DNA of 33,938 nt from Bigelowiella natans CCMP2755 (GCA_000320545.1 ADNK01000348.1:1-33938); one strand, 5' to 3'. Shown: positions 5,587 to 32,653, numbered from the stretch's first letter. A program made the numbers and translations. Notes: a model not told the origin generated them from the sequence alone.

Positions 5587-6389
5587 CTATTCATCATCAT
5601 CATCATCATCATCGTCGTCGTCTTCTTCTTCCTCCTCTTCCTCAGTCCCCTCAGGTGGATTTGGAAAGCTTTGTTCGATGACATCCTCGAAAAGTTTCTG
5701 AGACAAAGTAAAACCGGTTATACTTCACCGACATTGGGAGATTTGACCCTAGCTAAATGCAAGCAACAATGCACGTACTCCTCTGTTGTTTGCCTTCCAG
5801 AGACCCTCGAACACGCTGTCATAGGCCATACCGCCGAAAATTGCGACGCCCACCACTGCAGTCGAGTATGCAACGTTGGACTTCATGAAGACGTTGTACA
5901 ACAAGTCGTTGAATTGCTTAGGTTCATTCGTTTTGTAGAAAGATCTTCGGAGCGTGGGAACCACACGTTTGCTGCTGCAAGGAAGGGAGAGGAATGACAC
6001 AAATCATTAGAAGCTATCTACAGTGATAGTCTAGTGGAGACCTATGCCATGGCACAAATCAATTACGAATATAACGCCATGCCCTCGGGGAGGAGTGCAC
6101 GCGGAGAGATGGAGGGAGAGAGAGAGGGGGAGAGAGAAGGGGAGAGATAGGAAGAGAAGAGAAGAGCACACGAAAATTGTGCTTGCAAATAGCATCTTTA
6201 TGAAAAAGGGGAAGAAGGCAAGTTTTTATTCAATCAACATTTAAGCCACGGCCCTCCTCATTACTAACTGCCGCGCCAGGCAGAACCCCCTTCACAAGCT
6301 TCCCGCTAAGCCAGCGCGCCCCACCGATGCCCGATATAAATCAAGCGGATATACCTGGTGCGCGCAGACGAGGCCAATCTAGCCAACAT
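5587..6389 (-). CDS. QCR9: Cytochrome bc1 complex subunit 9 (QCR9/UQCR10 family), 3 exons, about 113 aa
   Basis: Exons 6389-6355, 5974-5779 and 5697-5587 (all GT-AG) give MLARLASSARTSSKRVVPTLRRSFYKTNEPKQFNDLLYNVFMKSNVAYSTAVVGVAIFGGMAYDSVFEGLWKANNRG|KLFEDVIEQSFPNPPEGTE7D10E*. The LYN.F..N..Y...TM helix...W...N.GKLF.D pattern is the QCR9 signature. Confidence 0.88.
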
Positions 6390-7173
6390 GGTTACTAGTT
6401 CCTTCTGTCGAGGGGGATGGGATCTCTGGGGTTGGCACGCTCACGCGTCTCCTGCTATTACTTGTCTCTCTTGCACGCCTTCAGGGGCGAATTAATGATA
6501 TTTTCGCATATTTTACCAATAAAATCGTCAATAACGTCCTATATTTTGACCAAATCCGCCCCTCGCCGATAAATAAAGTCACTGAAAAAAATCTATCCGT
6601 GAAGATCTTGGGGTGGGTGGTCAGGCGGTTGGGCGGCCGAAATTTGGGCAGAGATTTGGCACAAATTCATTGTCGTTTTATAATAATAGAATACATTATG
6701 AATGAAATCGGAGTTCTTTCGTCCAAAATTGAAACTGGTTGGGAAGAGTGTGGCGAGAGAACTAACTGGAGACTATTCGAGATATATATTTGGTCTCCAA
6801 ATGATCTCCTGGTAGAATCTCCGTTGAACTCCGAGCAACCCAAGCTATCACCATAATCAGATCTTTCCTGTTTCGCCATTCCTGCGTGCTACCTCCCTGC
6901 CCCCCTTCACGCATCAACGTAGTTCTTGCATAGACAGATATCTCTCGGTAATTATTCCCTAATTTACCAACCACTGAAGTTGGGTGGCATTCGCCTTTCT
7001 GCCCGCTGTTTTGCGTAAATTGGGTATTGGGGGAACAGTGATGTTTTCATATCTTTCTTCGACTTAGCCCCTCCTCCTTTCTTTAAAGCCTCTTCCAGAA
7101 ACTTCAGTTCTAAAATTATATTTCTTTAACCCTCTTGTACAGCTTGTTCCCTGGAGGTCCGACATTCGACACC
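6390..7173. promoter_or_regulatory. Probable bidirectional promoter region between divergent QCR9 and ARPC1
   Basis: About 780 bp between two head-to-head start codons, free of microsatellites. No specific element is called. Confidence 0.5.
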
Positions 7174-8919
7174 ATGCCTGTCGCTGATATCAAACCCTTC
7201 ACAAAAACTGGCGTCACTTGCATCGCTTTCAATGCCGACAAGTCTCTCATTGCTATCTGTCCAAACTCAAATAAAGTCTTGATCTATGAAACAAATGGCT
7301 CTGTTCATTCGACAAAATGGAATAAGGAGCCGAAGTACGTTTTGGAGGAGGTAATAACAAAAAACCAGCAGTATCTAGCCTGTAATAACTAAATCATCAC
7401 CATATATCATCCTCCTTAGCACACGGAAACAGTTGTGGGAATGGATTGGTGCCCTTCGACAAACCTGCTTGTGACTTGCGCACACGATCGAAACGCTTAT
7501 GTCTGGAAGCACGTGACTGAGAAGAAGGTGATCAAAGGAGGTAACGTGTCTTATCAGAAGGAAGATAAATGGAAGGCTGATCTCGTTATCTTGAGAATCA
7601 ATCGAGCTGCAACTGCAGTCAAGTGGTCTCCTTCAGGTATGATCACTCCTTGCAGGAAATTGCCTCACCCTAGCTAGCTCTCTCATGGGCTTCTCAGCAT
7701 CATCATCATCATCATCATCATCATTCCCTCCTCCATTTAGGCGCTAAGTTTGCCGTTACTAGCGGTGCGAAGGTGGTACCGATCTGCTACTATGTGGAAG
7801 AGCATAAATGGTGGACATGCAACACGATCAAAAAGCACAAATCTACGGTTCTCGATGTCGCATGGTGCCCAAATAGCAAGGTCCGTCATCTTTGCTCGCA
7901 TGTTTGGTGGGGGATAAGGAAGTAAATTCTTTGGGCTGAACAGTAGAATCTGACCACCTGTCATCGTTGCTCTTCTTCTTGTTGTTCTTCTATTTGCTCT
8001 TCTTCTTCTTCTTGCGATTAGTTTGTTGTTACTGGAGCAACCGATTACAAGTGCAGGATCATTTCCGCGTTCAAAGCGGAGCTTGACAGCTCGTATGTTT
8101 CATAAAATTTACCTCCTGTTCCGTTTTGTCTCACATGTGCGTCGTTCTTCTCTGTTTTGCGAAAATATCCCAGAGAGGACGACGGATTCGGCGCCATTTT
8201 CCCGAAGCAGCACCAATTTGGAGAAGTCTTAGCTGAGTTCACTCATGCAAAGGCTTGGGTCCAAAGCGTTGCATGGTCTCCAAGCTCCTACAGGCTTGCA
8301 TTCACTGGCCACGGCTCTACTATACACCTTGTGCAGATCGTTGCGGACGGTCCTCCTGTTGTCACTACAATCCGAGCAAGCGGACTACCCTACATCGCTG
8401 TTGAGTTTTTATCTGATAAGGCTGTGGTTGCGGCCGGGTATGACCAGAATCCGCACTTGTACGTCGCGTCTGATGCCAGCGGTGCTGAACCTGAGTGGAA
8501 ATTTGAGGGCAATATCGACAAAGAGGTCAAGAAAAAGAAGAGGGCCCTGGGGTCGTTTTCGGGGGCACGCGCCATGTTTGAAGGTGAGTGCGATTTCCAT
8601 CGAGTTGGTGTCATTACTAGGAATGCTTATACTTTCTGAAATGTGATAACAACAATAACGCAGCGAAATCGCTTCGCGGACAGGCGAGCAACGTGTCCAA
8701 CAAAAAAAGTACTGTTCATCAAAACTTGATTAGGTAAAACAAACATGCCTTTCATCTTGCTCTCGATTTTCGTGTTCTCACAAAATGCAATGTTAATTCA
8801 GTGGAGTTCTTCCTCTGGAGAATGCTACGATGATGACCTATGGATTGGATGGCATTGTAGCTTTCTGGAACATGAAGAATCAAGGGTTTGATGACAAGAG
8901 TCTGATGGCCAAAGAATGA
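7174..8919 (+). CDS. ARPC1: Actin-related protein 2/3 complex subunit 1 (p41-Arc, WD40), 7 exons
   Basis: Exons 7174-7350, 7420-7636, 7741-7880, 8022-8092, 8174-8583, 8664-8733 and 8802-8919 are all GT-AG and in frame. Motifs: [51 protein letters not shown]...[41 protein letters not shown]. Confidence 0.96.
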
Positions 8920-9009
8920 AAGTTTAACGCAATTAAGCATACGCTTTTCGTTGGCTAAGCTTAACATCTATATGAATTCAAATTTCGATGATTCTCATCA
9001 GTGAAACTG

Positions 9010-18149: not shown

Positions 18150-19495
18150 TACGTGTGGCTAGAATGGGCCAACAGTTCTTTCTCGCAACGCCCTGTTTTG
18201 GAGTGGATGTGTGTGGTCCGATCTGAAGATCTTGCGACGCGGTGTATGGAAATTGGCCTCAGTCGAGGGACTTAGATTCGAATAGACAGATGCCTTCACC
18301 CTCACCGATGACAACCGAGACACCCATTTTGTGCACCGTGTGCAGCTTTCACGAACTGCCAATTTATCAAATAAATGCCTTCCATTCTCGTTGTGCGACA
18401 AAAAACTTTTCCCACGTGAGGACGCATCCATGGAACTTTCGTTGTTTGCAATATGTTCTGTGTTGTCGCAGGACGAAGTCGCATTCGATTTTGATGCGAA
18501 TTGTCAAAGAAGCTTGGTGCTGGCCGTTGAAATCACTCTGTGCATTTGTTCGTCCATTGAACACAAGTAGCCTTTGTCTTAGCCACGTTTCGTTTGCGCT
18601 GCGTGCACGTGCGCATGCTAGCGTGCCAGTTGGAAACGTTGCTGATGTCACCGAAATTCGCGCCTGTTTCATTCGACGACCGGCCAAACACTGCTAGACT
18701 GATCGTGAGGTTTGCACGTTGGTGTGAAAACTGCACAAACGAAGACGCCTAAACGCGTTCATGAGAAAAGGCCCACAGCTAGCTAGCTAGACAGTGCTGG
18801 AATGCTGTGCCATGTGTGAACCCACCTGATTCAAAACTGCGCACGGTCACTGACGAACACACGATGCGAGTGTCTGCCAAGTTTTCACTGAGGAGTGCAC
18901 GAACTCCTGGCATTTGCGCACCCAGCTCACTGGCTCACGTGCGTGCCAGCGTGGTCCACATGTTGTCGTGGTCTGTGCTAGTGTGGGTCCAGCTAATCCT
19001 GTGTTTGTCTTCCGGCAAAACAAATTCCGAAAGTCACATGGGCAAACGTCGAAGATTTGTGCGAAATCACTCCAGGATCTTTCTCAAGTGTTCGAGAAAG
19101 ATGAAGATCACTCGAGAGTCTTCTCGAATCTAGCTATGTGGATGATGCAGGTAATTGAGAAGATGACACGTGTGGAATTGCATTGTGCACCATGCAAAAG
19201 TCCAAAGCCACCGCTCGCACAAAAAGAGCAACATCTCCCACGATTTCATGGCAGACAACCTTCAATGCCACAGCACAAACAAAGCGCATACTCCTTCCAG
19301 ATGGGAACAACTTATGAAACGCAATGGTGCATGATGAAATAAGGTCTGCACACAGCAGCATGAGAACACAACTATCTAGCTATGCGCACAGCACATGCAC
19401 CATGCTGACAGAAGGAGCCCTAATGATGCAGCATTCTACAAATCTACCATACATCTTGGTGATGCTACATCTAGTAGCTACATGCACTAATTACT
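18150..19495. other. Intergenic island C, rich in TGCA/CACG/CTAG; possible decayed transposon or viral remnant
   Basis: Abrupt compositional change from the AT-rich cyclase gene; no introns or microsatellites; interrupted coding-like frames. Confidence 0.55.
18181..19342 (+). pseudogene. Possible degenerate intronless ORF of unknown family
   Basis: Frame 18181-18570 runs 130 codons with one internal TAG and reads protein-like (FWSGCVWSDLKILRRGVWKLASVEGLRFE*TDAFTL...QDEVAFDFDANCQRSLVLAVEITLC). Further stop-interrupted stretches lie near 19015-19340. No family recognised. Confidence 0.25.
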
Positions 19496-19498
19496 GTC

Positions 19499-21691
19499 TT
19501 ATTTGTCATTAGTAGAAATCAAATCTAGCCCGACCGCTGCTCTTAACTCCTTAATCTGTTCATCAGTGAGGATTGAAACTTCTCCGGGAGCCAATGCTTC
19601 AGAAAGTAACAATGGTCCCATCGATATTCTTTTCAGCTCGACTACTTCTTTTCCCTAAACAAAATGTGATAAGATGCTGCTAATGATGCCGATGACAATA
19701 ACGATCATGATGACGTGTTGGGAAATTTTCCAACATGGAGAATCCTAGAATGCATATTACACACGAATTTCACCCGTTATGATATGTATACGATATGGCA
19801 AAAAATATATGAATGAAAAGCTGGCATGGAGAGCATATCAGGCCTGAAATTCATCAATAATTTTTATCATTTCTACATAATTCGTCGAAATTTCTCGCAT
19901 TTTTTTTTCTATGTTGCTACTTTTGCTGCTGCTGCTGCTGCTGCTTTTATTACCAGGCTACTGAACATTCTCCGAACCTGTCGATTCATTCCTTCGGTAA
20001 TTGTCATTTTCACTCTGCAAACTACTCCAGCTGCTGCAGAAAATTCGAAATCAAATTCGTCATTTTCATAATTTACATTGGCCGCCTCCTCACCATCATC
20101 ACATTTGTGAAGATGGCGGGCTTCTTCTTCCCCCTTGACAACGATGTCAATCGCACGTGCAAGACGTGTCTTCCCCGATCTCGGATCCTGATGGAGAGAG
20201 GAACAAGAGCAAAGTTGGTCGTATGACTTCTATGCATTTGGAAGCCTTGTTCTTATTCTTCCGATTCTTCTTCATGGCTCTGTCAGTTCATCCTGCCTAG
20301 TATATTTCCTCTACTCATCATTCGCTCACACCTTAAGCCTGATGCCGTGGAGGAGTCTTTCAACGTCGCAGGAATTCACATAGCTCTGCACGCCCACCTG
20401 GCGGAGCGATCAAAGAAAGGATGATGATGAAAAGAGAGAAACATGACGGTGAGAGGGAGCACTCTCTATCACAATTACGAGTACCAAGTAAGTTTTCGGA
20501 ATATGGTAAGTTGGATGCATGAGTCTATGAGCTAGTTCCCCTGTAACATAAAGATTAAGTAGTTACAAGGAGGAGGGTAACAAGGAGGAGGTGGTTGCTT
20601 CCATGTAATGGTCTAGTGTGGTTTTATGTTGGTACACAAGGATATTAGTAAGAACAGACCCTAATTTCCCCCCCCCCCCCCCTTCTTCTTATTCTTCTTC
20701 TTCTTCTTCTTCTACCGTCTGATGTGAAGAACAGTAACCCGGTGGTGTCAAGATCCAAGCGTCCCACCTATTCAAGAAATGCAGGGGAAATAAGATGGAA
20801 ATTATGAGAGAAGTGTGACGGTTATGATGACGTCAGGTTTACTGGTCGCAGTCTTGGTTTGAAAGCATTTACTTTTGAAGCACGTCTATCACCGTTTTAT
20901 GGGAGTTTGATTTCATCTGAGGAAGGGAAGGCAGGAGGATAGCCGGAGAATGATATATCTTTCATTTAAAAATCGATTGTCAGTACTTACTGCAGTGATA
21001 GTTGCTTTTGGTTTGTTCAGGATAAGGTGGTCATGAGCCCTCCAACTATCAATATCACGATTGCCTTTTTCAAGGGATAAAAAAATATTTAACCCAGGAA
21101 CAGATTGGACTAGATTGAGAGCAAATCACTTTCAAGCCCCTACCTGTGAATGGATCGATCAGCTCTAATTTCATCTCTGACGATAGCAACGACGATGACG
21201 ACGACGATGATTCGGTCGCCACAAGTTTAGAAGCCTTGAAGGAATGAGACGCAAACACAACAAAGGTTCGATTTGGATTATTTATCGACACTTACTTATC
21301 GAGATTCAAGAATCAATGCCAGTAGATTTACACTCCCCTTCGCCTGAAATTTACTACAGATCGACCATCGTCTCCCTTACCCAATCTCTCGTTCAAGACC
21401 TTAGTCACTTTTTGGCCGTCGAGTCTCACAAGCCCCTTGAGTATCTTATCGCGAGCTGCCATCCTCGTGATCCCAAACGTATGCGACACCTACGTTGTAG
21501 AAAATCATCACGCCTTTAAACATAATCAACCGGCTTCTTATATATTTGTGCAATGATCGGTGATTCATTCTCACGATTCGATCAAGTCGCAGAAACCCTT
21601 TGGGCATGGGACTTCCAACGGGAGCGAGTCCACTTGGGTTGGCGGAAAATGGAAAGCTACATCTCCCAGAAAAGTACTCCCGGAATCCCAT
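19499..21691 (-). CDS. RsuA/RluB/E/F-family pseudouridine synthase with N-terminal S4 domain, probably organellar; one internal frame break; start codon uncertain (ATG 21691 or 21607)
   Basis: S4: LRLDRI|VSHTFGITRMAARDKILKGLVRLDGQKVTK|ASKLV. Motif I: HLILNKPKATITA|MKSNSHKTVIDVL. Catalytic motif: RLRP|VGRLDLDTTGLLFFTSDG (exon starts 20767). Then ELAHRLMHPTYHIPKTY, ITEGMNRQVRRMF (exon 20187-19954) and GKEVVELKRISMGPLLL...LAPGE (exon 19654-19499). Confidence 0.9.
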
Positions 21692-22542
21692 CGAATCCCC
21701 GGTAATTCCCACGTAGCTCCGTAGCTATGGGATGTCTTATGACAAAATAACAACGACAGAGCTACGAACACAACCAAATACGAAGGAATTTAGAGAAATG
21801 TATCTTTAGTCTAGATCTAGATCTAGTAATTGATTCTGTAATTTTGAGCTGGTAGTTTTTTGTGGAAATACAGAATAACATAGCTGGGAAGTCAAGGGCG
21901 CGAAAAGAATAACTAAATCCATGAAAATCAACATCCAAAATCACCAAAAAAAAACCAACGCAGATTGGTTGGTCGGTTAACAGAAGGATTTAAAGATTTA
22001 AAGATGTGAAAAGCTGGAAGAGCTTTGGGTTCAATAATGGAAAATTATGTAAAATGGAGGGTTTCTAGTAGACGCCGACTTCAATAATCAATAATTTTCG
22101 TGACAAGCTGTCAAAATTTAACATCGCCAAAAAAAGGCCATTTTTTCCCAGAAAATAACTTTCCGATGCATCTTTTAATTATTTAGCTCGTACATCTGAA
22201 AGGAAAGCAAGCAAATTTTAACGAAGGTGGGAAAAATCAAAAATTTTAGAAATGTCCTGACTTAGGACATAATTTTCCTGTAATTTGGATTGTCGTCTAT
22301 TGATGTTTTTTTTCAACTTCAGAATCCTTGAGGACACCAAGTTATAGTCGTAATCTTAAAATTGCGACACAAATATTCGATGTCGCATACCAATTAAACC
22401 CCTATTTAATATTTTTCCCGCTTCCTTTTTGTTTGGAATACATCTGAAAATCCATCGACCCTGCGGCCGACCCCCCCGTTGTGAAGGGGTGAGTTGGGAC
22501 CCTCCTTGGAAAACGGGAGGGTATAGACATAAAGATAATTTG

Positions 22543-23291
22543 ATGGAAGAATTTAATACGTGGCCCTCACCTGTGGGCATGCTTCAAGAGGATGAAAAGG
22601 GGACAAGTTATGTTAAAGATGATAGCAGTACCCCACAACACAGTATGAGCATCACGAGTAATAATCCAGCAGGGGGTACGGGAGCGTTCAACCTAGCTAA
22701 TATTGCAAAAGTTCCATGGAAAATCCATCTACAGCATTCGGTAAATTTCGACCTCGTTGCCCCTGGCCTCATCACACTATTGGGTTTTGACGGAATTGAG
22801 CTTTGGGCGTTGGACTCGAAGTCGGAGGAAGTAGTAATGCTCGCCGATTGCGTGCGTGATGAATCGCTGTTAAGCTGGTCCCGATACAGTAATGTACATA
22901 AATTCAATCTGGGAACGGGTATGGTAGGTAGGGTCTTCATGTCAGGAGCTTCCGAGTGGCAAAGTGACGTCGGCAAGATAAAACAGGATGTCTTCTTTAG
23001 AAGCTCGGGGGCTCGGCGACTCGGGGTGAAAGGAGTAGGATGTATACGGTGCGAGACTGTAAATAGAATAGAAGTTGTTATCTTTCTCTACAGTCGGCAG
23101 GAGTTGACCTTCAGTAAGGACCGGATAAACTTTGTGGAGGGGATGATCTCCCAGTGGATTAAGAGCGGAAAGGACTCGACTAAGTTCTACTCGACCAACA
23201 ACACTTCCTCCTCATCGAAGAGATCTTCGATGCAAATGCAAGTTGTTGAAAGTGCCGACGTGACAGCTATGGAAGCGGATTACGAATCTCC

Positions 23292-23327
<36 letters not shown>

Positions 23328-26265
23328 GTTCAACATGCAGAAGCCGTCGGGTAGGGATAATTCGCAGCAGGGGCCTTTGATGAGGTTGATGGTGTTAGAC
23401 CTGTTTTTGTCCTCGTTTGGAGGTATAACAAAGCGTCTTGGATTTGATGGCTCGGAAATATGGATTGAGGACTCGCCTGGATCTGGTACTAGCACGCCAT
23501 GCAAGCTGTGTTCCCCACGCAAATTGTGCAGCATCATGTCCTTTTCCCCATTTTCTTTCTCTTGAAATTAACATCTTTTGTAGTGCAATTTTACCTACTA
23601 TCACTAACTACTAGTACAACTACTACTACCACCACCACCGCCCCTGCTGCTATTGACATTGCTCAGGCGTATTGCAACACGGCGGGACCATCGCAACCAA
23701 ACCCCTTCACAAGGAGTGGGCGAGTTATAGCACGCAATTCAAGTTTTCCAACGAACGGTCAACCGCGGCGATTAACGCCCCAATCATCACTCTGTGTGCC
23801 TATACAGCAGAAAACTACGAATATATGGATATTCAAAACAAATCGATATTGCTCCTCTGATTCTTCTTCTGCTGTTACTTGCTACTGGTGATAGATCGCT
23901 CATTGGACGCATCCTGTGCACAACGAGGCCGGAATGGCAGCCTGATGTCTCCCAGCTGTCCCTGTCAGTATTCACACGGGCAACTGGAGCTCGGAGATAT
24001 GGCGTGAGGGGAATGGGCGGTGTATACTGTAGAACACGTCAAGGTAGTGTTATTATAGCCGCCTCTTGAATATGAAGCGGCTCCCACCTCGTTACCAACA
24101 CCGTCACCGTTATTATCATCACCATCATTATCCCCCAACATTATTCATCCAGGGCTCCAGTTCGTGATCACCCTATTTAGTGGGAAACGAATCAAGTTCA
24201 ACAAGGAGATGTACTTCCTAAACCGCCATGCTGCTTTACTACAATATACGTACAAATGACGATGGTGGCAGCAACAAGCGAGAGTGCCAGCGATCATGTT
24301 CATTTCATTAAGTGTGCATCTGCAAATTTGCATTCATGCCGCCTCGATCGATATATCGTTCATTGAGAGTTGCTTCTCATCTGCTACACCCCCCCCCGCC
24401 CCCCCCCTCCCTCTCTCCCCCTCTACCCTTCGGCTCATTTTTCCTAGAAAAAGGAATATTCTAAAGATGGTAGAGATATGGGCGCAAGGGTCCTTTCCTG
24501 GGCCCTCAAAACCGCTGAAGATCATATCACGGGGCGGGTCAATAAGTGGCGATTCAGCTAGCTCTTCTCGCAGCACGTCTATCATGCCCCAGGCCCACTC
24601 GTTAAATTCATGGGTAGATATGCAAGGAGGCGGGGCGGGGGGCTCTTTCTTCAGAGGAAGCAGTGGTATAACAGCGAATTACAACCACCATACATTTGCT
24701 GACACAATCATCAAACCCCATCGATATATCGTTCATCACCATCAGTCTTCCTCATCATTATCACCATCATCATCATCATCATCATTACCATGCATCAACA
24801 CCATCTGCAAAATACTAAGAACTTGCCTAGCGGCTGCTACCATGGCCCTCTTACGATTCATACATTCTAATTGATCTCCCCCCCCCCCCTTGTCGCCCCA
24901 TCATCTATCCTCCCTCCCCCCCAACAGAAGACAGCCGCATGTTTGACGGAGGGTTCCCTCTCGAGAAGCGCTCGATATCGTTCCCGGACCCCCTGAAGCT
25001 TTCCTCCATGTTCGGCGGGGGAGGGAGGATGGGCGGCGGCAGCAACATGAGCGCGGGGAGCAGCGAGGGGGGGGGGATGATCGGGGTTGGGCCGGGCAGT
25101 TTAGGGTCTCGCGGCTCCGCCACCTCCAAGCGTGGGAAGCCGAAATGCCGATATGTGTGCGGGTACTGTGAGAAGGTCTTCCATAAGAAGGGCAACTGGC
25201 AAGCCCACCTCCGCACGCACACCAAGGAAAAACCATTCGCCTGCACGGCGTGTGGGAGGCAATTCACTCAGAAGAGTAACATGAAGGTAGGAACTGGTAG
25301 GTAGTAGTAGTAGTAGTAGTAGTAGTAGTGCTGGTGCTGGTGCTGGTGGTGTGTGTGGGGGGGGGGGGGGTCGGTCGATGATGGCGGATGATGATGATGA
25401 TGGTTATTATTATCGTTATCGAGAATCAAGTTAGGAGGAAGCTTGTCGTTTAGACACTGCTACTTCACACATGTATTAATACATCTATCGTCCTCCTCCC
25501 CTCCCTCTCCACCCTACTCTTTGTCTAAACGCTTCACCCACCCATCAGCGTCACATGCTCAAGATCCATAAGATACCCAAGGACTTCCCCATGCCCTCGG
25601 GGGCTACTGGAATGGTCGGCGGCTCGGTTGGCGGGGGAGGGGGGAGCGCCCCTTCCTCATCATCTACTCCGTTACGACAGTCCAACTCGATGCCAGCGCT
25701 GCACGATTTCAAGGATAAGGCAAGCGAGCCCTCACCAAATTTCTTTATACAGCAGCATGATCAAGGTAAAAAGTTGTGATGGTGAAATTTCGGGGGGGAG
25801 GGGGTGGGGAGGGGGGGGGGGGGTGTGTTAAAGATACGGGGGAATCTATTGAATCTAGGAAAGAACAAATGTGGTTGGTTTTTGGTTAGCCTGGGGCATA
25901 TTCTACTACTTAACCCCCCTCCCCATTTACTGAACGTTTGCCGGTTTTACTCGATCCTTCCTCCTTTTCTTCCTTTCTTCCCTTACCCTACCCATCTAGT
26001 CCGTGCTAGTCTGCAGCAATCTAGTCCAATGATGATGAGTGGTGGTACGACAAACACCGGCAGCCTGTCGATTGGGGGGAGGGGAATCCACAGTGGTCCC
26101 ACTGGCGTTCATGCTCCCGACAACCTAATGATGCATCCTCCTAACGTCCAACCAATACAACATCACCAGCAGCAGCAGCAGCAGCGCCCTCCGCGGCACC
26201 AACTCCTTCAGCATCAACAACAACAACAGCAGCAGCAAAACGTACTCAAATGGATGCGCAATTGA
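22543..26265 (+). CDS. Putative transcription factor: two tandem NLP-type GAF-like domains, two C2H2 zinc fingers, poly-Q tracts; 8 exons
   Basis: Exons 22543-23485, 23667-23757, 23895-24043, 24153-24210, 24448-24665, 24928-25286, 25549-25765 and 26000-26265 splice in frame. Repeat 1: LGFDGIELW...WSRYS..HKF...[18 protein letters not shown]...[14 protein letters not shown]. Repeat 2: LGFDGSEIW...[10 protein letters not shown]...[18 protein letters not shown]...[14 protein letters not shown]. Fingers: [45 protein letters not shown]|RHMLKIH, with a Kruppel-type linker. Confidence 0.88.
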
Positions 26266-27049
26266 GGAAGGAGCTGCCTCTCGTTCGCAGCCACCACTAG
26301 CTGTCACGGCCAGCGAGAAAATAGAAAAAACTTCACTCGAGAATCTACGAATTATTCATCTCTTCGAGATGATATTATCACTATCATCCTTCGACGTGGT
26401 GTAATTCATTTCAAACAAAAAAAAATATAAATAAATATAAAGGTATGTATTATATATATTTAAGGTCTCTTTCTTTCTACAGAAAAGGCAGGCCTTGTAA
26501 TGTTGTAGTAAGAACGTCGTGGTTGTTAAATTGTACATATGTGCGGCGACATCGGAAAATCGACATGGGGAGGATCACACGGAAAAACATCTGTGTTCTC
26601 TCCTCCTCCTCCTACCGTCGGTGCGTTTTCTTTGTTTTGACACAACATATGCACCCTGAAGGCTGAAGTTATGGCCACCCATGAAGGTGGTTGATTGAAA
26701 GGATTTAGTTTCATTCATTCATTAAGAGAAGCAGTATCCGTTATCTTTTCCATATTGGTAAGACACAGACGACATAGCAATACCCACGTGGCACATTCTA
26801 GATGGAAAGCCACATACGGCGAGTAATTGACAAATGTAAAATTACTTCCCGAAGCAAGATTGAATGGCATTTTCATGTGTTTTGACATGTCAGAGTTGTA
26901 AATTTAATATATTGAGCAACTTTAACCTCATCAGCCAGAACTTGCCTCAACTGGTATGCTGAAACATGCAAGTTGCAGTTACATGCGCCCCATTTCTCGT
27001 CAACTTAATTTTGCCTGCCTCGCAATTTCTATAAATTGCGGGGGTGTGG

Positions 27050-31625: not shown

Positions 31626-32653
31626 CTACTCATCATCTTCCTCGATCTTAGGAGCCAAGTAGAAGCGGATGTGACCCTTCTTTTCAATCTTGTATTCCAC
31701 AACAAGTGGGACGTCTGCTGACATGCTAAGGGTTACATACTGGGATAGAGGAGTTGCCTTGGAGAAACTTTGAAGATAACGAAGAGCAAAGTTAAGGGTG
31801 ATATCTTCTTCTGTTTCAATGTGAATAGTTTCTCCCTTCTTCTCGCTCTTATCAGCAGATGAAGTCTTGCGGAGAGTAATATTTCCGGTTCCCATGTCAC
31901 CATTAACGCTGAATTTGATTCCTTCCTTGCTAGCGGAAATCTGCACGGTGTCTCCCATAACGGCGATCTTGTCGACGACGTTTTTGAACTCGCTGGAAGG
32001 CATTTTTACTGTGCATGTGTACTCAGTATCAGGGATGCCAAGGTGCTCACTGTCAATGTCAATAAGCTTCATCTCGAAATCCGAAATTCGGTCCTTGTCT
32101 GGATAAAATACAAGAATAGACTTTAACTTCCACCTTGAAACACGTGCATGCGTACACACGCACACACCGCATAGAAGGGTATACCAACATGGAAGTAAAT
32201 ACTAACATATCATTTCCTTATCATTCCAACTGTACTCATTTCTGACTCTTTTCCTGACTGTATACACTTTCTATTCTGCAATGCTTCTGATATTTTCTCT
32301 CATTCTTGATTACATTCCAACGCATAATAATTACCCGAGTTCTCGAACATCAGAGTTAGAGAGTCTCCTTTGTCATCAGCTTTTAATGTGATATCATCGT
32401 CGTTTCCTGCACACTTGAGGATCTTGGTGAGGGAACCAGTGTTGATACCTAGTGCCTTGGAGCGGTCACAACGGTAATGGTCGAAGCCATCGCAACGGAG
32501 CTGGAGTGCGATAAGTGAGACGTGGCTGGTGTCCATAGCCTGGAGTGAAATTCCCTCAGCGTTGCAGTCGAAGTTGGCATCACTCACGAGATCCTTCATG
32601 GAATCGATGAGCTTTTTAAAGATGTGGCCTTCCTTGAGTCTTGCTTCAAACAT
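31626..32653 (-). CDS. PCNA: Proliferating cell nuclear antigen, 2 exons
   Basis: Exons 32653-32335 and 32098-31626 (GT-AG, phase 1). MFEARL...[11 protein letters not shown]...YRCDR...KILKCA...[17 protein letters not shown]...[14 protein letters not shown]...YLAPKIEE. Confidence 0.99.

What the first reader, a model, noticed from the sequence alone, without database searches (positions are those of the whole stretch)
22543..26265. Unusual sensor-transcription factor: tandem NLP-like GAF domains fused to C2H2 zinc fingers
Seen: two internally homologous modules of about 140 aa, each with G-x-x-GR-[VI]-x5-EW-x-x-DV-x7-F-x-R-x3-A-x3-GV-[KR]-G, separated by a Ser/poly-Q linker and followed by two Kruppel-linked C2H2 fingers. 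Established: this motif matches the N-terminal GAF-like region of plant NIN-like proteins (GLPGRVF...PEWTPDV...Y.R...A...VRG), the nitrate-responsive part of NLPs, where the DNA-binding domain is RWP-RK; related GAF-like domains precede plant MYC-type bHLH factors. Inference: a one-component, small-ligand (possibly nitrate/nitrogen) sensing regulator built on a different DNA-binding module. I do not recognise this architecture as described.
Basis: partly seen in the sequence, partly recalled or inferred. Interest (0 to 1): 0.8.

Follow-up and report, generated by a model that had tools for sequence, protein, structure and literature searches.

The report
Tandem-GAF C2H2 transcription factor, chlorarachniophyte alga
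This is a real, expressed gene of a chlorarachniophyte alga (Bigelowiella natans or a very close relative) for a DNA-binding regulator that carries two copies of a GAF domain, the kind found at the front of plant nitrate (NLP) and jasmonate (MYC) regulators, joined to two classical zinc fingers, a combination not described in the literature I could search and whose input signal is unknown.

Summary
Window 22543-26265 (+) is one 8-exon gene: 2301 nt, 766 aa, all introns GT..AG. Spliced transcript contigs from three independent studies confirm the splicing.

- **Architecture.** The protein has two homologous modules of about 152 aa (35% identity, E 9e-27), a Ser/poly-Q linker, a basic stretch and two Krüppel-type C2H2 fingers.
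- **Fold.** Both modules model confidently (pLDDT 95-96) as GAF folds. For module 1, the closest solved structures are the plant EGL3/MYC3 N-terminal domains (Z 16-18.5), ahead of generic GAFs including the nitrate receptor NreA (Z about 13.5-14.5).
- **Pfam.** The window sequence itself is below threshold for bHLH-MYC_N and GAF_NLP. Its four orthologues pass bHLH-MYC_N, and one of them passes GAF_NLP.
- **Distribution.** The same architecture is found in Lotharella, Amorphochlora, Chlorarachnion, MMETSP transcripts and an uncultured relative. This genome holds two more such genes and one gene with a single module. An unchecked scan note reports the same reading elsewhere in this genome.
- **Not an NLP or MYC.** There is no RWP-RK, PB1 or bHLH domain, and the insert that lengthens the plant MYC/EGL3 domain is missing.

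The nitrate idea is untested and has no direct support. My best reading is a signal-gated C2H2 transcription factor whose input is unknown. I class it as a new variant of a known kind, of moderate interest.

The parts
22459..22542 (+). 5' UTR; the transcript contigs begin at 22459-22523
   Evidence: contig pieces start at 22459 (X6), 22501 (X1) and 22523 (X2). The first ATG, at 22543, matches the orthologue N-termini (ME[DE]F..W).
22543..23485 (+). Exon 1: N-terminal region, the whole of GAF-like module 1, the Ser/poly-Q linker and the first helix and strand of module 2
   Evidence: Open frame. It aligns to P0001-P0004. The donor at 23486 is confirmed by spliced contigs.
22714..23178 (+). GAF-like module 1 (155 aa)
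   Evidence: AF2 pLDDT 95.9, pTM 0.91. Foldseek best matches EGL3/MYC3 at E 4e-8 to 4e-7, then GAF domains. VIA-align Z 18.5 to EGL3 and 13.5-14.5 to other GAFs. Pfam bHLH-MYC_N 23.9 bits and GAF_NLP 15.9 bits, both below cut-off.
23179..23373 (+). Ser-rich/poly-Q linker, with CAG x11 at 23293-23326
   Evidence: Mean identity among orthologues is only 0.30.
23374..24493 (+). GAF-like module 2, split over exons 1 to 5 (coding parts 23374-23485, 23667-23757, 23895-24043, 24153-24210, 24448-24493)
   Evidence: Exon pieces align to module 2 of the orthologues at 82-94% identity for exons 2 and 3. Own-genome profile matches. The orthologue module (P0001:272-427) models at pLDDT 95.1, with EGL3/MYC3 then GAFs as best matches and TM 0.77-0.82 to bacterial GAF models.
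23667..23757 (+). Exon 2
   Evidence: Joints 23484/23666 and 23756/23894 in spliced contigs.
23895..24043 (+). Exon 3, the core of module 2 (GR-I...EW..DV...F.R...A...GVRG)
24153..24210 (+). Exon 4. The donor is at 24211, not the 24250 of my first model.
   Evidence: Orthologue alignment and joint 24210/24448.
24448..24665 (+). Exon 5: last helix of module 2, then a spacer
24928..25286 (+). Exon 6: Gly/Ser-rich spacer, basic stretch (KRGKPK), finger 1 (25152-25220) and the first half of finger 2 (25236-25286)
   Evidence: Pfam zf-C2H2 34.2 bits against 25.2. Joint 24664/24927.
25549..25765 (+). Exon 7: second half of finger 2 (25549-25569, RHMLKIH), then the conserved IPKDFP and SMPAL segments
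   Evidence: Adjacent contig pieces 25284/25547 and joint 25763/25998. Alignment.
26000..26265 (+). Exon 8: Gln-rich tail, conserved C-terminal WMR motif and the TGA stop
26266..26500 (+). 3' UTR (at least this far)
   Evidence: Contig pieces run to 26500, the end of the stretch that was laid.

Best explanation
**What it is.** This is a single expressed nuclear gene of a chlorarachniophyte (Bigelowiella natans or a very close relative). It encodes a 766-aa sequence-specific transcription factor. In order, the protein has:
- a short conserved N-terminus;
- GAF-fold module 1;
- a Ser/poly-Q linker;
- GAF-fold module 2;
- a low-complexity spacer;
- a basic stretch and two Krüppel-type C2H2 fingers;
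- a Gln-rich tail ending in a conserved WMR motif.

All of this is shown directly by the sequence and the tool results.

**How it most likely works (inferred).** The tandem GAF modules are the regulatory input of a signal-gated factor. Module 2 is as conserved as the fingers, so I take it to be the main receiver. It would bind a signal and change the accessibility, localisation or activity of the finger and Gln-rich parts. Module 1 is less conserved and is the parent of a separate single-module paralogue. It more likely mediates dimerisation or pairing with that paralogue.

**What the signal is.**
- A small molecule or ion of unknown identity is the most likely input, about 0.45.
- A partner protein or peptide is close behind, about 0.30.

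Nitrate is only one candidate among the small ligands.
For: **One gene, one transcript**
- 8 exons, 2301 nt, all GT..AG, ending in TGA.
- Every intron is removed in transcript contigs of three runs from three studies. One contig links module 2 to the fingers and the 3' UTR.
- Full-length transcript ORFs of 626-686 aa with the same order of parts exist in four other chlorarachniophyte data sets.

**GAF fold**
- Models reach pLDDT 95.9 and 95.1.
- Module 1 gives Z 18.5 to EGL3, 16-17 to MYC3 and 13-14.5 to many GAFs.
- Module 2 gives TM 0.77-0.82 and rmsd about 2.4 Å to bacterial GAF models.
- A profile of 79 domains hits EGL3 at 1.2e-8, MYC3 at 1.7e-4, and Nlh2 and PDE GAFs at 4-6e-3.
- Orthologues pass the Pfam cut-off for bHLH-MYC_N at 31-37 bits against 30.2. 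P0001 passes GAF_NLP at 27.3 against 24.1.

**DNA binding**
- zf-C2H2 is above cut-off.
- The finger pair matches PRDM9, ZNF568 and CTCF fingers at 1e-37 to 1e-30.

**Functional constraint**
- Mean pairwise identity among orthologues is 0.86 for module 2, 0.89 for the fingers and 0.69 for module 1. The linkers are at 0.30-0.47.

**A small-ligand reading is plausible**
- The modules are compact, canonical-size GAFs of 152 aa.
- They lack the insert of about 60 residues that EGL3 and MYC3 carry between the second and third strands.
- Close sequence relatives include multi-GAF adenylate/guanylate cyclases, histidine kinases and a GGDEF protein.

**A paralogue role for module 1**
- The single-module proteins fall inside the module-1 clade, with support 100/99.
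Against: - No ligand, partner, target site or expression response has been measured. The mechanism is inference from domain identity and conservation.
- The closest solved structures (EGL3, MYC3) dock partner proteins (MYBs, JAZ peptides), not small molecules. They stand 2.5-4 Z units above generic GAFs.
- Near-total conservation of module 2, surface included, fits a protein interface at least as well as a small pocket.
- No cyclic-nucleotide NKFDE motif is present.
- Some GAF domains are purely structural.
Confidence: 0.6

Rival explanations
1. Partner-docking platform. As in plant MYC2/3 (JAZ peptides) and GL3/EGL3 (R2R3/R3 MYBs), the GAF-like modules bind a short helix or domain of another regulator, either a repressor or a co-activator. 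That binding, rather than a metabolite, sets the activity of the factor. The single-module paralogue could be such a partner or a competitor.
For: - EGL3 and MYC3 are the best structural matches for both modules by Foldseek (E 4e-8 to 1e-6). For module 1 by VIA-align they give Z 16-18.5 against at most 14.5 for other GAFs.
- bHLH-MYC_N is the best-scoring Pfam family in the window protein and all four orthologues.
- Module 2 is 86% identical across genera over its whole length.
- A nuclear-type basic tail (KRRR) follows the lone module in the paralogues.
Against: - The insert of about 60 residues between the second and third strands of EGL3 is absent (profile positions 41-57 correspond to EGL3 residues 40-115). 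From my own knowledge, this part of the plant domain holds the JAZ- or MYB-contacting surface. I did not verify that here.
- Pfam matches cover only the core, positions 89-155 of 181.
- No JAZ- or MYB-type partner has been looked for.
Confidence: 0.3
2. One reading: it is a nitrate (or nitrogen-status) receptor and transcription factor. It would be a functional analogue of NLP7/NIT2, with the nitrate-binding GAF coupled to C2H2 fingers instead of RWP-RK.
For: - The fold is shared with NreA, and with the NreA-like sensor NitrOFF1 (Z 13.5-14.3).
- GAF_NLP is matched above cut-off in orthologue P0001.
- No RWP-RK domain is detectable in this genome. The best score is 16.9 bits against a cut-off of 29.3, the level of the bacterial controls. 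The usual plant and green-algal nitrate regulator therefore seems to be missing.
- A review reports that NLP7 binds nitrate through its N-terminal GAF-like region (PMC13766177).
Against: - NreA is no closer than dozens of unrelated GAFs.
- The shared motif is the general GAF core.
- The residues said to bind nitrate in NLP7 (the 'HLY' set, PMC9731675) could not be aligned or checked here.
- No expression or binding data exist.
- The RWP-RK absence comes from a six-frame, exon-by-exon search of an intron-rich genome, so it is weak.
- Three paralogous tandem-GAF finger genes exist, so at most one or some of them would be the nitrate sensor.
Confidence: 0.12
3. The GAF modules no longer sense anything. 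They serve as constitutive dimerisation or scaffold domains of an otherwise ordinary two-finger transcription factor.
For: - From established knowledge, GAF domains commonly dimerise, as in phosphodiesterases and phytochromes, and some have lost ligand binding.
- A two-finger protein would gain specificity from dimerisation.
- No known ligand motif is present.
Against: - Module 2 is conserved at the level of the DNA-binding fingers, far above module 1.
- Both modules have been kept since before the split of three paralogue lines.
- This argues for more than a generic dimer contact.
Confidence: 0.15
4. Gene-model artefact: the GAF exons and the finger exons belong to two neighbouring genes.
For: The transcript assemblies break at the CAG repeat (23285-23335), so no single contig covers module 1 together with the fingers.
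Against: - The break lies inside one uninterrupted reading frame (exon 1) that already contains module 1 and the start of module 2.
- A single contig joins module 2 to the fingers and the 3' UTR.
- Complete transcript ORFs in four other species have the whole architecture.
- The frames close exactly at 2301 nt.
Confidence: 0.01

Closest known systems
N-terminal domain of plant MYC2/MYC3 and GL3/EGL3 bHLH factors (Pfam bHLH-MYC_N, PF14215; PDB 4rs9, 4ywc, 7fdl, 7fdo)
   Same: - It is the best structural match (Z 16-18.5, rmsd 1.7-2.8 Å over about 135 residues for module 1).
- It is the best Pfam family, and orthologues are above the cut-off.
- It shares the core signature around G-x-G-[LMI]-[PV]-G ... 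F-x-R ... A.
- The domain sits N-terminal to a DNA-binding domain in a transcription factor.
   Different: - The DNA-binding domain is C2H2, not bHLH.
- The module is duplicated in tandem.
- It is compact (152 aa) and lacks the insert of about 60 residues of the plant domain.
- The Arg of G-R-V is kept here. It is E in MYC3 and G in EGL3.
- The organism is a rhizarian alga.
Plant NIN-like proteins and green-algal NIT2 (GAF_NLP PF22922 + RWP-RK + PB1 in NLPs)
   Same: - The same GAF subfamily; GAF_NLP is passed by orthologue P0001.
- The G-[LM]-[PV]-G-R-V ... EW..DV ...
- The domain precedes a DNA-binding domain in a regulator.
   Different: - There is no RWP-RK and no PB1.
- There are two modules instead of one.
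- The window sequence is below the GAF_NLP cut-off.
- No evidence exists for nitrate binding.
Bacterial one-component GAF regulators and receptors (NifA, FhlA, NorR, Nlh1/2; the nitrate receptor NreA)
   Same: - Canonical GAF fold (TM about 0.8 to bacterial GAF models; Z 13-14.5 to solved ones).
- The logic of a sensor domain coupled to a transcription output.
   Different: - This is a eukaryotic nuclear protein with zinc fingers.
- There is no AAA+ or helix-turn-helix output domain.
- The ligand is unknown.
Tandem GAF-A/GAF-B of cyclic-nucleotide phosphodiesterases and cyanobacterial cyclases
   Same: - Two GAF domains in tandem ahead of an effector.
- Multi-GAF cyclases are among the nearer sequence relatives (P0023 and P0024).
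   Different: - No NKFDE motif.
- The effector is a DNA-binding finger pair.
- A long disordered linker separates the modules instead of a connecting helix.
Two-finger Krüppel-type C2H2 transcription factors
   Same: - Two C-x2-C-x12-H-x3/4-H fingers with a TGEKP-like linker, preceded by a basic stretch.
- Gln-rich regions typical of activators.
   Different: I know of no described member with GAF domains, and the literature searches found none.

Membership tests
GAF domain superfamily (fold) | Six-stranded antiparallel sheet flanked by N- and C-terminal helices on one side and short helices on the other, about 150 aa | tested here: met
   Both modules model at pLDDT 95 or more with the order H-E-E-H-E-H-E-H-E-E-H. 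There are hundreds of GAF matches and TM 0.77-0.82 to bacterial GAF models.
GAF domain superfamily (sequence) | Significant profile match to canonical GAF families | tested here: met
   The A5 profile hits Nlh2 and PDE GAF chains at 4-6e-3. Related proteins match GAF_2, GAF and GAF_3. The window sequence alone does not reach these Pfam models.
bHLH-MYC_N (PF14215) | Score at or above the Pfam gathering cut-off (30.2 bits) | tested here: inconclusive
   Window exon 1 scores 23.9 bits, below the cut-off. Orthologues P0001-P0004 score 31.0-37.0 bits, above it. Only profile positions 89-155 of 181 are matched.
MYC/GL3-type bHLH transcription factors | A bHLH DNA-binding domain C-terminal to the N-terminal domain | tested here: not met
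   No HLH family appears in the Pfam scans of the window exons or the orthologues. C2H2 fingers are there instead.
MYC/GL3-type bHLH transcription factors | An extended N-terminal domain of about 190 aa, with the insert that carries the partner-contacting region | tested here: not met
   The modules are 152 aa. EGL3 residues 40-115 correspond to only 16 profile positions. Only 135 residues of EGL3 chain range 9-204 align.
NIN-like proteins / NIT2 | GAF_NLP (PF22922) at or above the cut-off of 24.1 bits | tested here: inconclusive
   The window scores 15.9 bits. P0001 scores 27.3, above the cut-off. P0002-P0004 score 16.7-22.2, below it.
NIN-like proteins / NIT2 | An RWP-RK DNA-binding domain | tested here: not met
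   There is no RWP-RK in the Pfam scans, and no RWP.RK motif in any of the 156 related proteins held at that point. The own genome's best score is 16.9 bits, below the 29.3 cut-off.
NIN-like proteins | A C-terminal PB1 domain | tested here: not met
   PB1 is not reported in any scan of the window exons or the orthologues.
NreA/NLP7-type nitrate receptors | Nitrate-coordinating pocket residues, and measured nitrate binding | not testable with these tools
   Only the fold is shared (Z 13.5-13.9 to NreA).
Cyclic-nucleotide-binding GAF (PDE, CyaB) | The NKFDE motif (N-K...F-x3-D-E) | tested here: not met
   A pattern search found no instance in window exon 1 or in P0001-P0004, P0160 or P0014.
Krüppel-type C2H2 zinc-finger proteins | C-x2-C-x12-H-x3-5-H fingers above the Pfam cut-off, joined by a TGEKP-like linker | tested here: met
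   zf-C2H2 scores 34.2-35.4 bits against 25.2, with two stretches. The linker is THTKEKPF. PDB finger proteins match at 1e-37 to 1e-30.

The most novel reading that the evidence does not exclude
The tandem-GAF C2H2 factors are the nutrient or metabolite receptors of chlorarachniophytes. In particular, the window-type protein could be a direct nitrate or nitrogen-status sensor that replaces the RWP-RK (NLP/NIT2) system, which is not detectable in this genome. If so, the NLP/MYC-type GAF module would be an ancient, portable sensor cassette that has been wired independently to three unrelated DNA-binding domains: RWP-RK, bHLH and C2H2.
Probability: 0.12. Interest if true: 0.8.

Novelty: new variant of a known kind. 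Interest (0 to 1): 0.55.

Why it matters
**For plant biology.** The N-terminal GAF-like module of plant NLP and MYC-type factors is usually treated as plant-specific. In plants it is the site of nitrate perception (NLP7) and of JAZ or MYB docking (MYC, GL3). Here the same subfamily is duplicated in tandem and joined to a third class of DNA-binding domain, in a rhizarian alga. More distant relatives occur in ochrophyte algae and in bacterial-type signalling proteins.

This gives an outgroup for asking what the ancestral function of the module was, ligand or partner. It also shows that the module is a portable regulatory cassette.

**For chlorarachniophytes.** Almost no transcription factors have been characterised in this group. 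This work defines a small conserved family of three tandem-GAF finger genes plus one single-module gene in this genome. All are obvious candidates for environmental or metabolic regulation.

**Limits.** It is not a new kind of system, and its signal is unknown.

Tried and rejected
**Searches that gave little or nothing**
- A PDB sequence search with the narrow 14-sequence profile gave only EGL3 at E 0.19. It became significant only with the 79-sequence profile.
- Pfam on the isolated module-2 exons gave nothing, because the pieces are too short.
- The raw RNA run X22 was too thin (21 reads) to show joints. The splicing evidence rests on Logan contigs, whose spliced form shows that they derive from RNA.
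- Five literature searches found no description of the architecture or of chlorarachniophyte regulators of this kind.
- The primary NLP7 paper (PMC9628810) is not held, so the nitrate-pocket residues could not be taken from it.

**Ideas considered and dropped**
- Green-algal (endosymbiont) origin of the module. The nearest relatives outside chlorarachniophytes are ochrophyte proteins from Phaeothamnion, Hapterophycus, Ectocarpus, Heterosigma and Nitzschia. One cyanobacterial cluster appeared by language-model features only. The tree does not resolve the deeper branches. I make no origin claim.
- My first donor for exon 4 (24250). The orthologue alignment and the RNA joints put it at 24211.

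- Exons were searched by reference, and module 2 was modelled from orthologue P0001.
- Pocket comparison with NreA or NLP7 was not possible, because no coordinates are available to scripts.
Full report
**1. What is in the sequence**

The window is eukaryotic DNA. The region 22543-26265 (+) holds a chain of open frames separated by short GT..AG introns. My gene model has eight exons:

| Exon | Coordinates |
|---|---|
| 1 | 22543-23485 |
| 2 | 23667-23757 |
| 3 | 23895-24043 |
| 4 | 24153-24210 |
| 5 | 24448-24665 |
| 6 | 24928-25286 |
| 7 | 25549-25765 |
| 8 | 26000-26265 |

The exons sum to 2301 nt, which is 766 codons plus TGA, with consistent phases throughout.

Each exon was searched by reference. 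The joined step is left out.

**2. Transcript evidence**

Twenty public runs from seven studies of one organism hold about half of the sampled words of the stretch. That is the share expected if they hold only the exons.

I laid three of these runs, from three studies, on the window. Their contigs skip exactly the predicted introns:
- 181 nt
- 137 nt
- 109 nt
- 237 nt
- 262 nt
- 234 nt

All are GT..AG. The seventh intron (25287-25548) is shown by adjacent pieces of the same contigs.

One 2212-nt contig of X2 runs from 23336 through the module-2 exons, both finger exons and the 3' UTR. Module 1 lies on another contig (22459/22523 to 23284). That contig ends at the CAG repeat, which is an assembly break inside the uninterrupted exon-1 frame.

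X1 also holds unspliced pieces over introns 3 and 4. These are intron retention or DNA carry-over. The raw-read RNA run was too thin to add anything.

**3. Organism and orthologues**

A word-based protein search with exon 1 found four proteins of 626-686 aa at 50-66% identity:
- an MMETSP transcript;
- a Lotharella globosa protein, A0A6U3CYA9;
- an Amorphochlora amoebiformis protein, AAMO2058_001263500;
- a second MMETSP transcript.

All carry the C2H2 fingers. Shorter proteins without fingers were also found.

The alignment of these proteins with the window's exon pieces validates every exon. It also corrected my first donor for exon 4.

Two results point to Bigelowiella natans or something very close. 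A Bigelowiella natans JGI model (Bigna1/132754, P0027) maps exon by exon onto contig C2790 of the window's genome. The C1218 paralogue is near-identical to a JGI protein, P0008.

**4. The two modules are homologous and are GAF domains**

*Internal homology.* Exon 3 alone matches exon-1 residues 126-174 at E 1.3e-6. Window module 1 against the orthologue's module 2 gives 35% identity and E 9e-27.

*Pfam.*
- On the window's exon 1, bHLH-MYC_N scores 23.9 bits (cut-off 30.2) and GAF_NLP 15.9 bits (cut-off 24.1). Both are below threshold.
- The four orthologues pass bHLH-MYC_N at 31.0-37.0 bits.
- P0001 passes GAF_NLP at 27.3 bits.

*Models.* AlphaFold models built on a 79-sequence domain alignment are confident. 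Window module 1 reaches pLDDT 95.9 and pTM 0.91. Module 2, taken from orthologue P0001 because the window's copy is split by introns, reaches 95.1 and 0.90.

*Fold matches.*
- Foldseek against the PDB puts EGL3 and MYC3 N-terminal domains first for both modules. Many bacterial and animal GAF domains follow, including NreA.
- VIA-align on module 1 gives the scores below.
- Against ESM Atlas models, module 2 superposes on bacterial GAFs at TM 0.77-0.82 and rmsd 2.2-2.5 Å over about 146 residues.

| Match | Z | Detail |
|---|---|---|
| EGL3 | 18.5 | rmsd 1.7 Å over 135 residues |
| MYC3 | 16-17 | |
| Best generic GAF | 14.5 | |
| NreA | 13.5-13.9 | |

*Sequence profile.* The 79-sequence profile reaches EGL3 at 1.2e-8, MYC3 at 1.7e-4, and Nlh2 and PDE GAFs at 4-6e-3.

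The test 'the repeats do not adopt a GAF fold' also fails. Both repeats are GAF domains of the subfamily that includes the plant NLP and MYC N-terminal domains.

**5. How they differ from the plant domains**

- The modules are compact, at 152 aa.
- In the profile alignment, EGL3 residues 40-115 face only 16 profile positions. The plant-specific insert is therefore missing.
- Pfam matches cover only the conserved core.
From my own knowledge of the GAF Pfam consensus, that core is a Gly-rich turn into a helix, D-V, F-x-R and A...G. It does not point to nitrate.
- There is no RWP-RK, PB1 or bHLH domain.
- There is no cyclic-nucleotide NKFDE motif.

**6. The fingers**

Exon 6 encodes a basic stretch, finger 1 and half of finger 2. 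Exon 7 supplies the rest of finger 2. Pfam zf-C2H2 is above its cut-off. The pair has a TGEKP-like linker and matches classical DNA-binding fingers of PRDM9, ZNF568 and CTCF at 1e-37 to 1e-30.

**7. Family and distribution**

*In this genome.* The module occurs at four loci:
- the window gene;
- C852, with two modules plus fingers, the orthologue of the 813-aa Chlorarachnion reptans protein P0160;
- C2790, a divergent third type matching P0161 of Lotharella and P0027 of Bigelowiella;
- C1218, a 359-aa intronless ORF with one module and a basic KRRR tail.

*Exhaustive profile search.* It found 929 proteins at E <= 1e-3, of which 51 are at E <= 1e-10.

*Other tandem-module proteins with two C2H2 fingers*:
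- P0014, on a MAG contig;
- P0017, on a metagenome scaffold of unknown organism;
- P0021 and P0022, which are MMETSP-type transcripts.

The DegP-like neighbour of P0014 is closest to Amorphochlora and Bigelowiella proteins. That MAG is therefore an uncultured relative.

*Tree.* A maximum-likelihood tree puts all module-1 copies, together with the single-module paralogues, in one clade (support 100/99). The module-2 copies of the window type, the P0160 type and P0014 fall in another (95/86). The tandem duplication therefore predates these lineages, and the single-module genes derive from module 1.

*Relatives outside the group.* None of the 156 proteins held at that point has an RWP-RK motif. 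Of 70 further hits scanned, 49 match bHLH-MYC_N, 25 match GAF_NLP and 15-17 match GAF or GAF_2. Some carry cyclase, histidine-kinase, GGDEF or PAS domains. The named ones are ochrophytes: Heterosigma, Nitzschia, Ectocarpus D8LLI8, Phaeothamnion and Hapterophycus.

**8. Conservation pattern**

Mean pairwise identity among the four orthologues:

| Region | Identity |
|---|---|
| N-terminus | 0.41 |
| Module 1 | 0.69 |
| Linker | 0.30 |
| Module 2 | 0.86 |
| Spacer | 0.47 |
| Basic stretch plus fingers | 0.89 |
| Tail | 0.31-0.42 |

Module 2 is constrained as strongly as the DNA-binding domain.

**9. Mechanism**

*Shown.* This is a sequence-specific-type finger protein with two GAF modules. It is expressed and conserved.

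*Inferred.* The GAF tandem is the regulatory input.

- For a small ligand of unknown identity (about 0.45):
  - canonical compact GAFs without the plant insert;
  - nearest relatives that include typical sensor proteins;
  - the precedent of bacterial GAF regulators and of NLP7.
- For a partner protein (about 0.30):
  - EGL3 and MYC3 are the closest structures;
  - the whole of module 2 is conserved;
  - a single-module paralogue exists that could pair with module 1.
- For a purely structural role (about 0.15).

Nitrate specifically is about 0.12. The only arguments are the family resemblance, reported nitrate binding by the NLP7 N-terminal region (review PMC13766177; critique PMC9731675), and the lack of a detectable RWP-RK domain in this genome. 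That last point is weak evidence, because the genome is intron-rich and was searched exon by exon.

**10. Novelty**

Database entries call the orthologues 'C2H2-type domain-containing protein' or 'hypothetical protein'. Five full-text searches found no description.

An earlier unchecked first-reader note of this scan (s1-417589) reports the same reading on another piece of the same genome. That fits the paralogues found here.

I class the finding as a new variant of a known kind: a GAF-regulated transcription factor with a new DNA-binding partner and a tandem arrangement, restricted so far to chlorarachniophytes and close relatives.

**11. Limits**

- No residue-level pocket analysis was possible.
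- Module 2 was modelled from an orthologue that is 93-94% identical to the window in exons 2 and 3.
- VIA-align was run on module 1 only.
- The species labels of the RNA runs are coded.

Noticed in passing
window 26239-26262; C-termini of P0001-P0004 and P0011: The window-type subfamily ends in a conserved (F/Y)(P/S)WMR(S/T) motif: FPWMR in three species, LKWMRN in the window. It resembles the YPWM hexapeptide by which animal Hox proteins bind TALE homeodomain partners. The other tandem-GAF paralogues lack it. It may be a docking motif, or the resemblance may be chance.
   Followed up: partly
G000:C1218:169046-170125 (L005:3046-4125): An intronless 359-aa gene with a single module-1-type GAF domain, an N-terminus like that of the window protein (MET.W...) and a basic KRRR tail, but no DNA-binding domain. 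Orthologues occur in other chlorarachniophytes (P0005-P0009, P0013). It is a candidate partner or competitor of the tandem-GAF factors.
   Followed up: partly
G000:C852:~18800-23730 (L006) and G000:C2790:~54100-60560, minus strand: Two further tandem-GAF plus C2H2 genes in the same genome. They are the orthologues of Chlorarachnion P0160 and of Lotharella P0161 / Bigna1 132754 (the public model P0027 is only 349 aa and lacks the fingers).
   Followed up: partly
L016 (ENA ERZ23491500 scaffold_3788), gene 6001-9000: A 999-aa single-ORF protein (P0017) with two very divergent modules and two C-terminal C2H2 fingers, on a metagenome scaffold of unknown organism. It sits on long branches in the tree, and I did not determine its origin.
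   Followed up: no
window 24211-24447 and 24044-24152: Run X1 holds contigs that are colinear with the genome across introns 3 and 4 (pieces 24015-24180 and 24181-24477), alongside the spliced form. This is either intron retention or DNA in the library.
   Followed up: no
window 25792-25824 and 23622-23639: Contigs of X1 and X2 show an odd joint from 25824 back to 23622 with 16 other letters between, plus loose ends at a G-rich run (GGGGGGGAGGG x2.6). Two differences from the window (T>G at 25805, A>G at 25810) lie in the same intronic G-run. This is most likely assembly noise at low-complexity sequence, or an allele.
   Followed up: no
window 31629-32165, minus strand: An exon encoding the C-terminal domain of PCNA (PCNA_C, 1.2e-47), an ordinary neighbouring gene.
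   Followed up: no
ESM Atlas cluster: The nearest language-model feature cluster to the tandem region is a set of 162-aa bacterial (mostly cyanobacterial) single-domain proteins that match GAF_2, bHLH-MYC_N and GAF_NLP together. It is a lead for the deep origin of this GAF subfamily.
   Followed up: no
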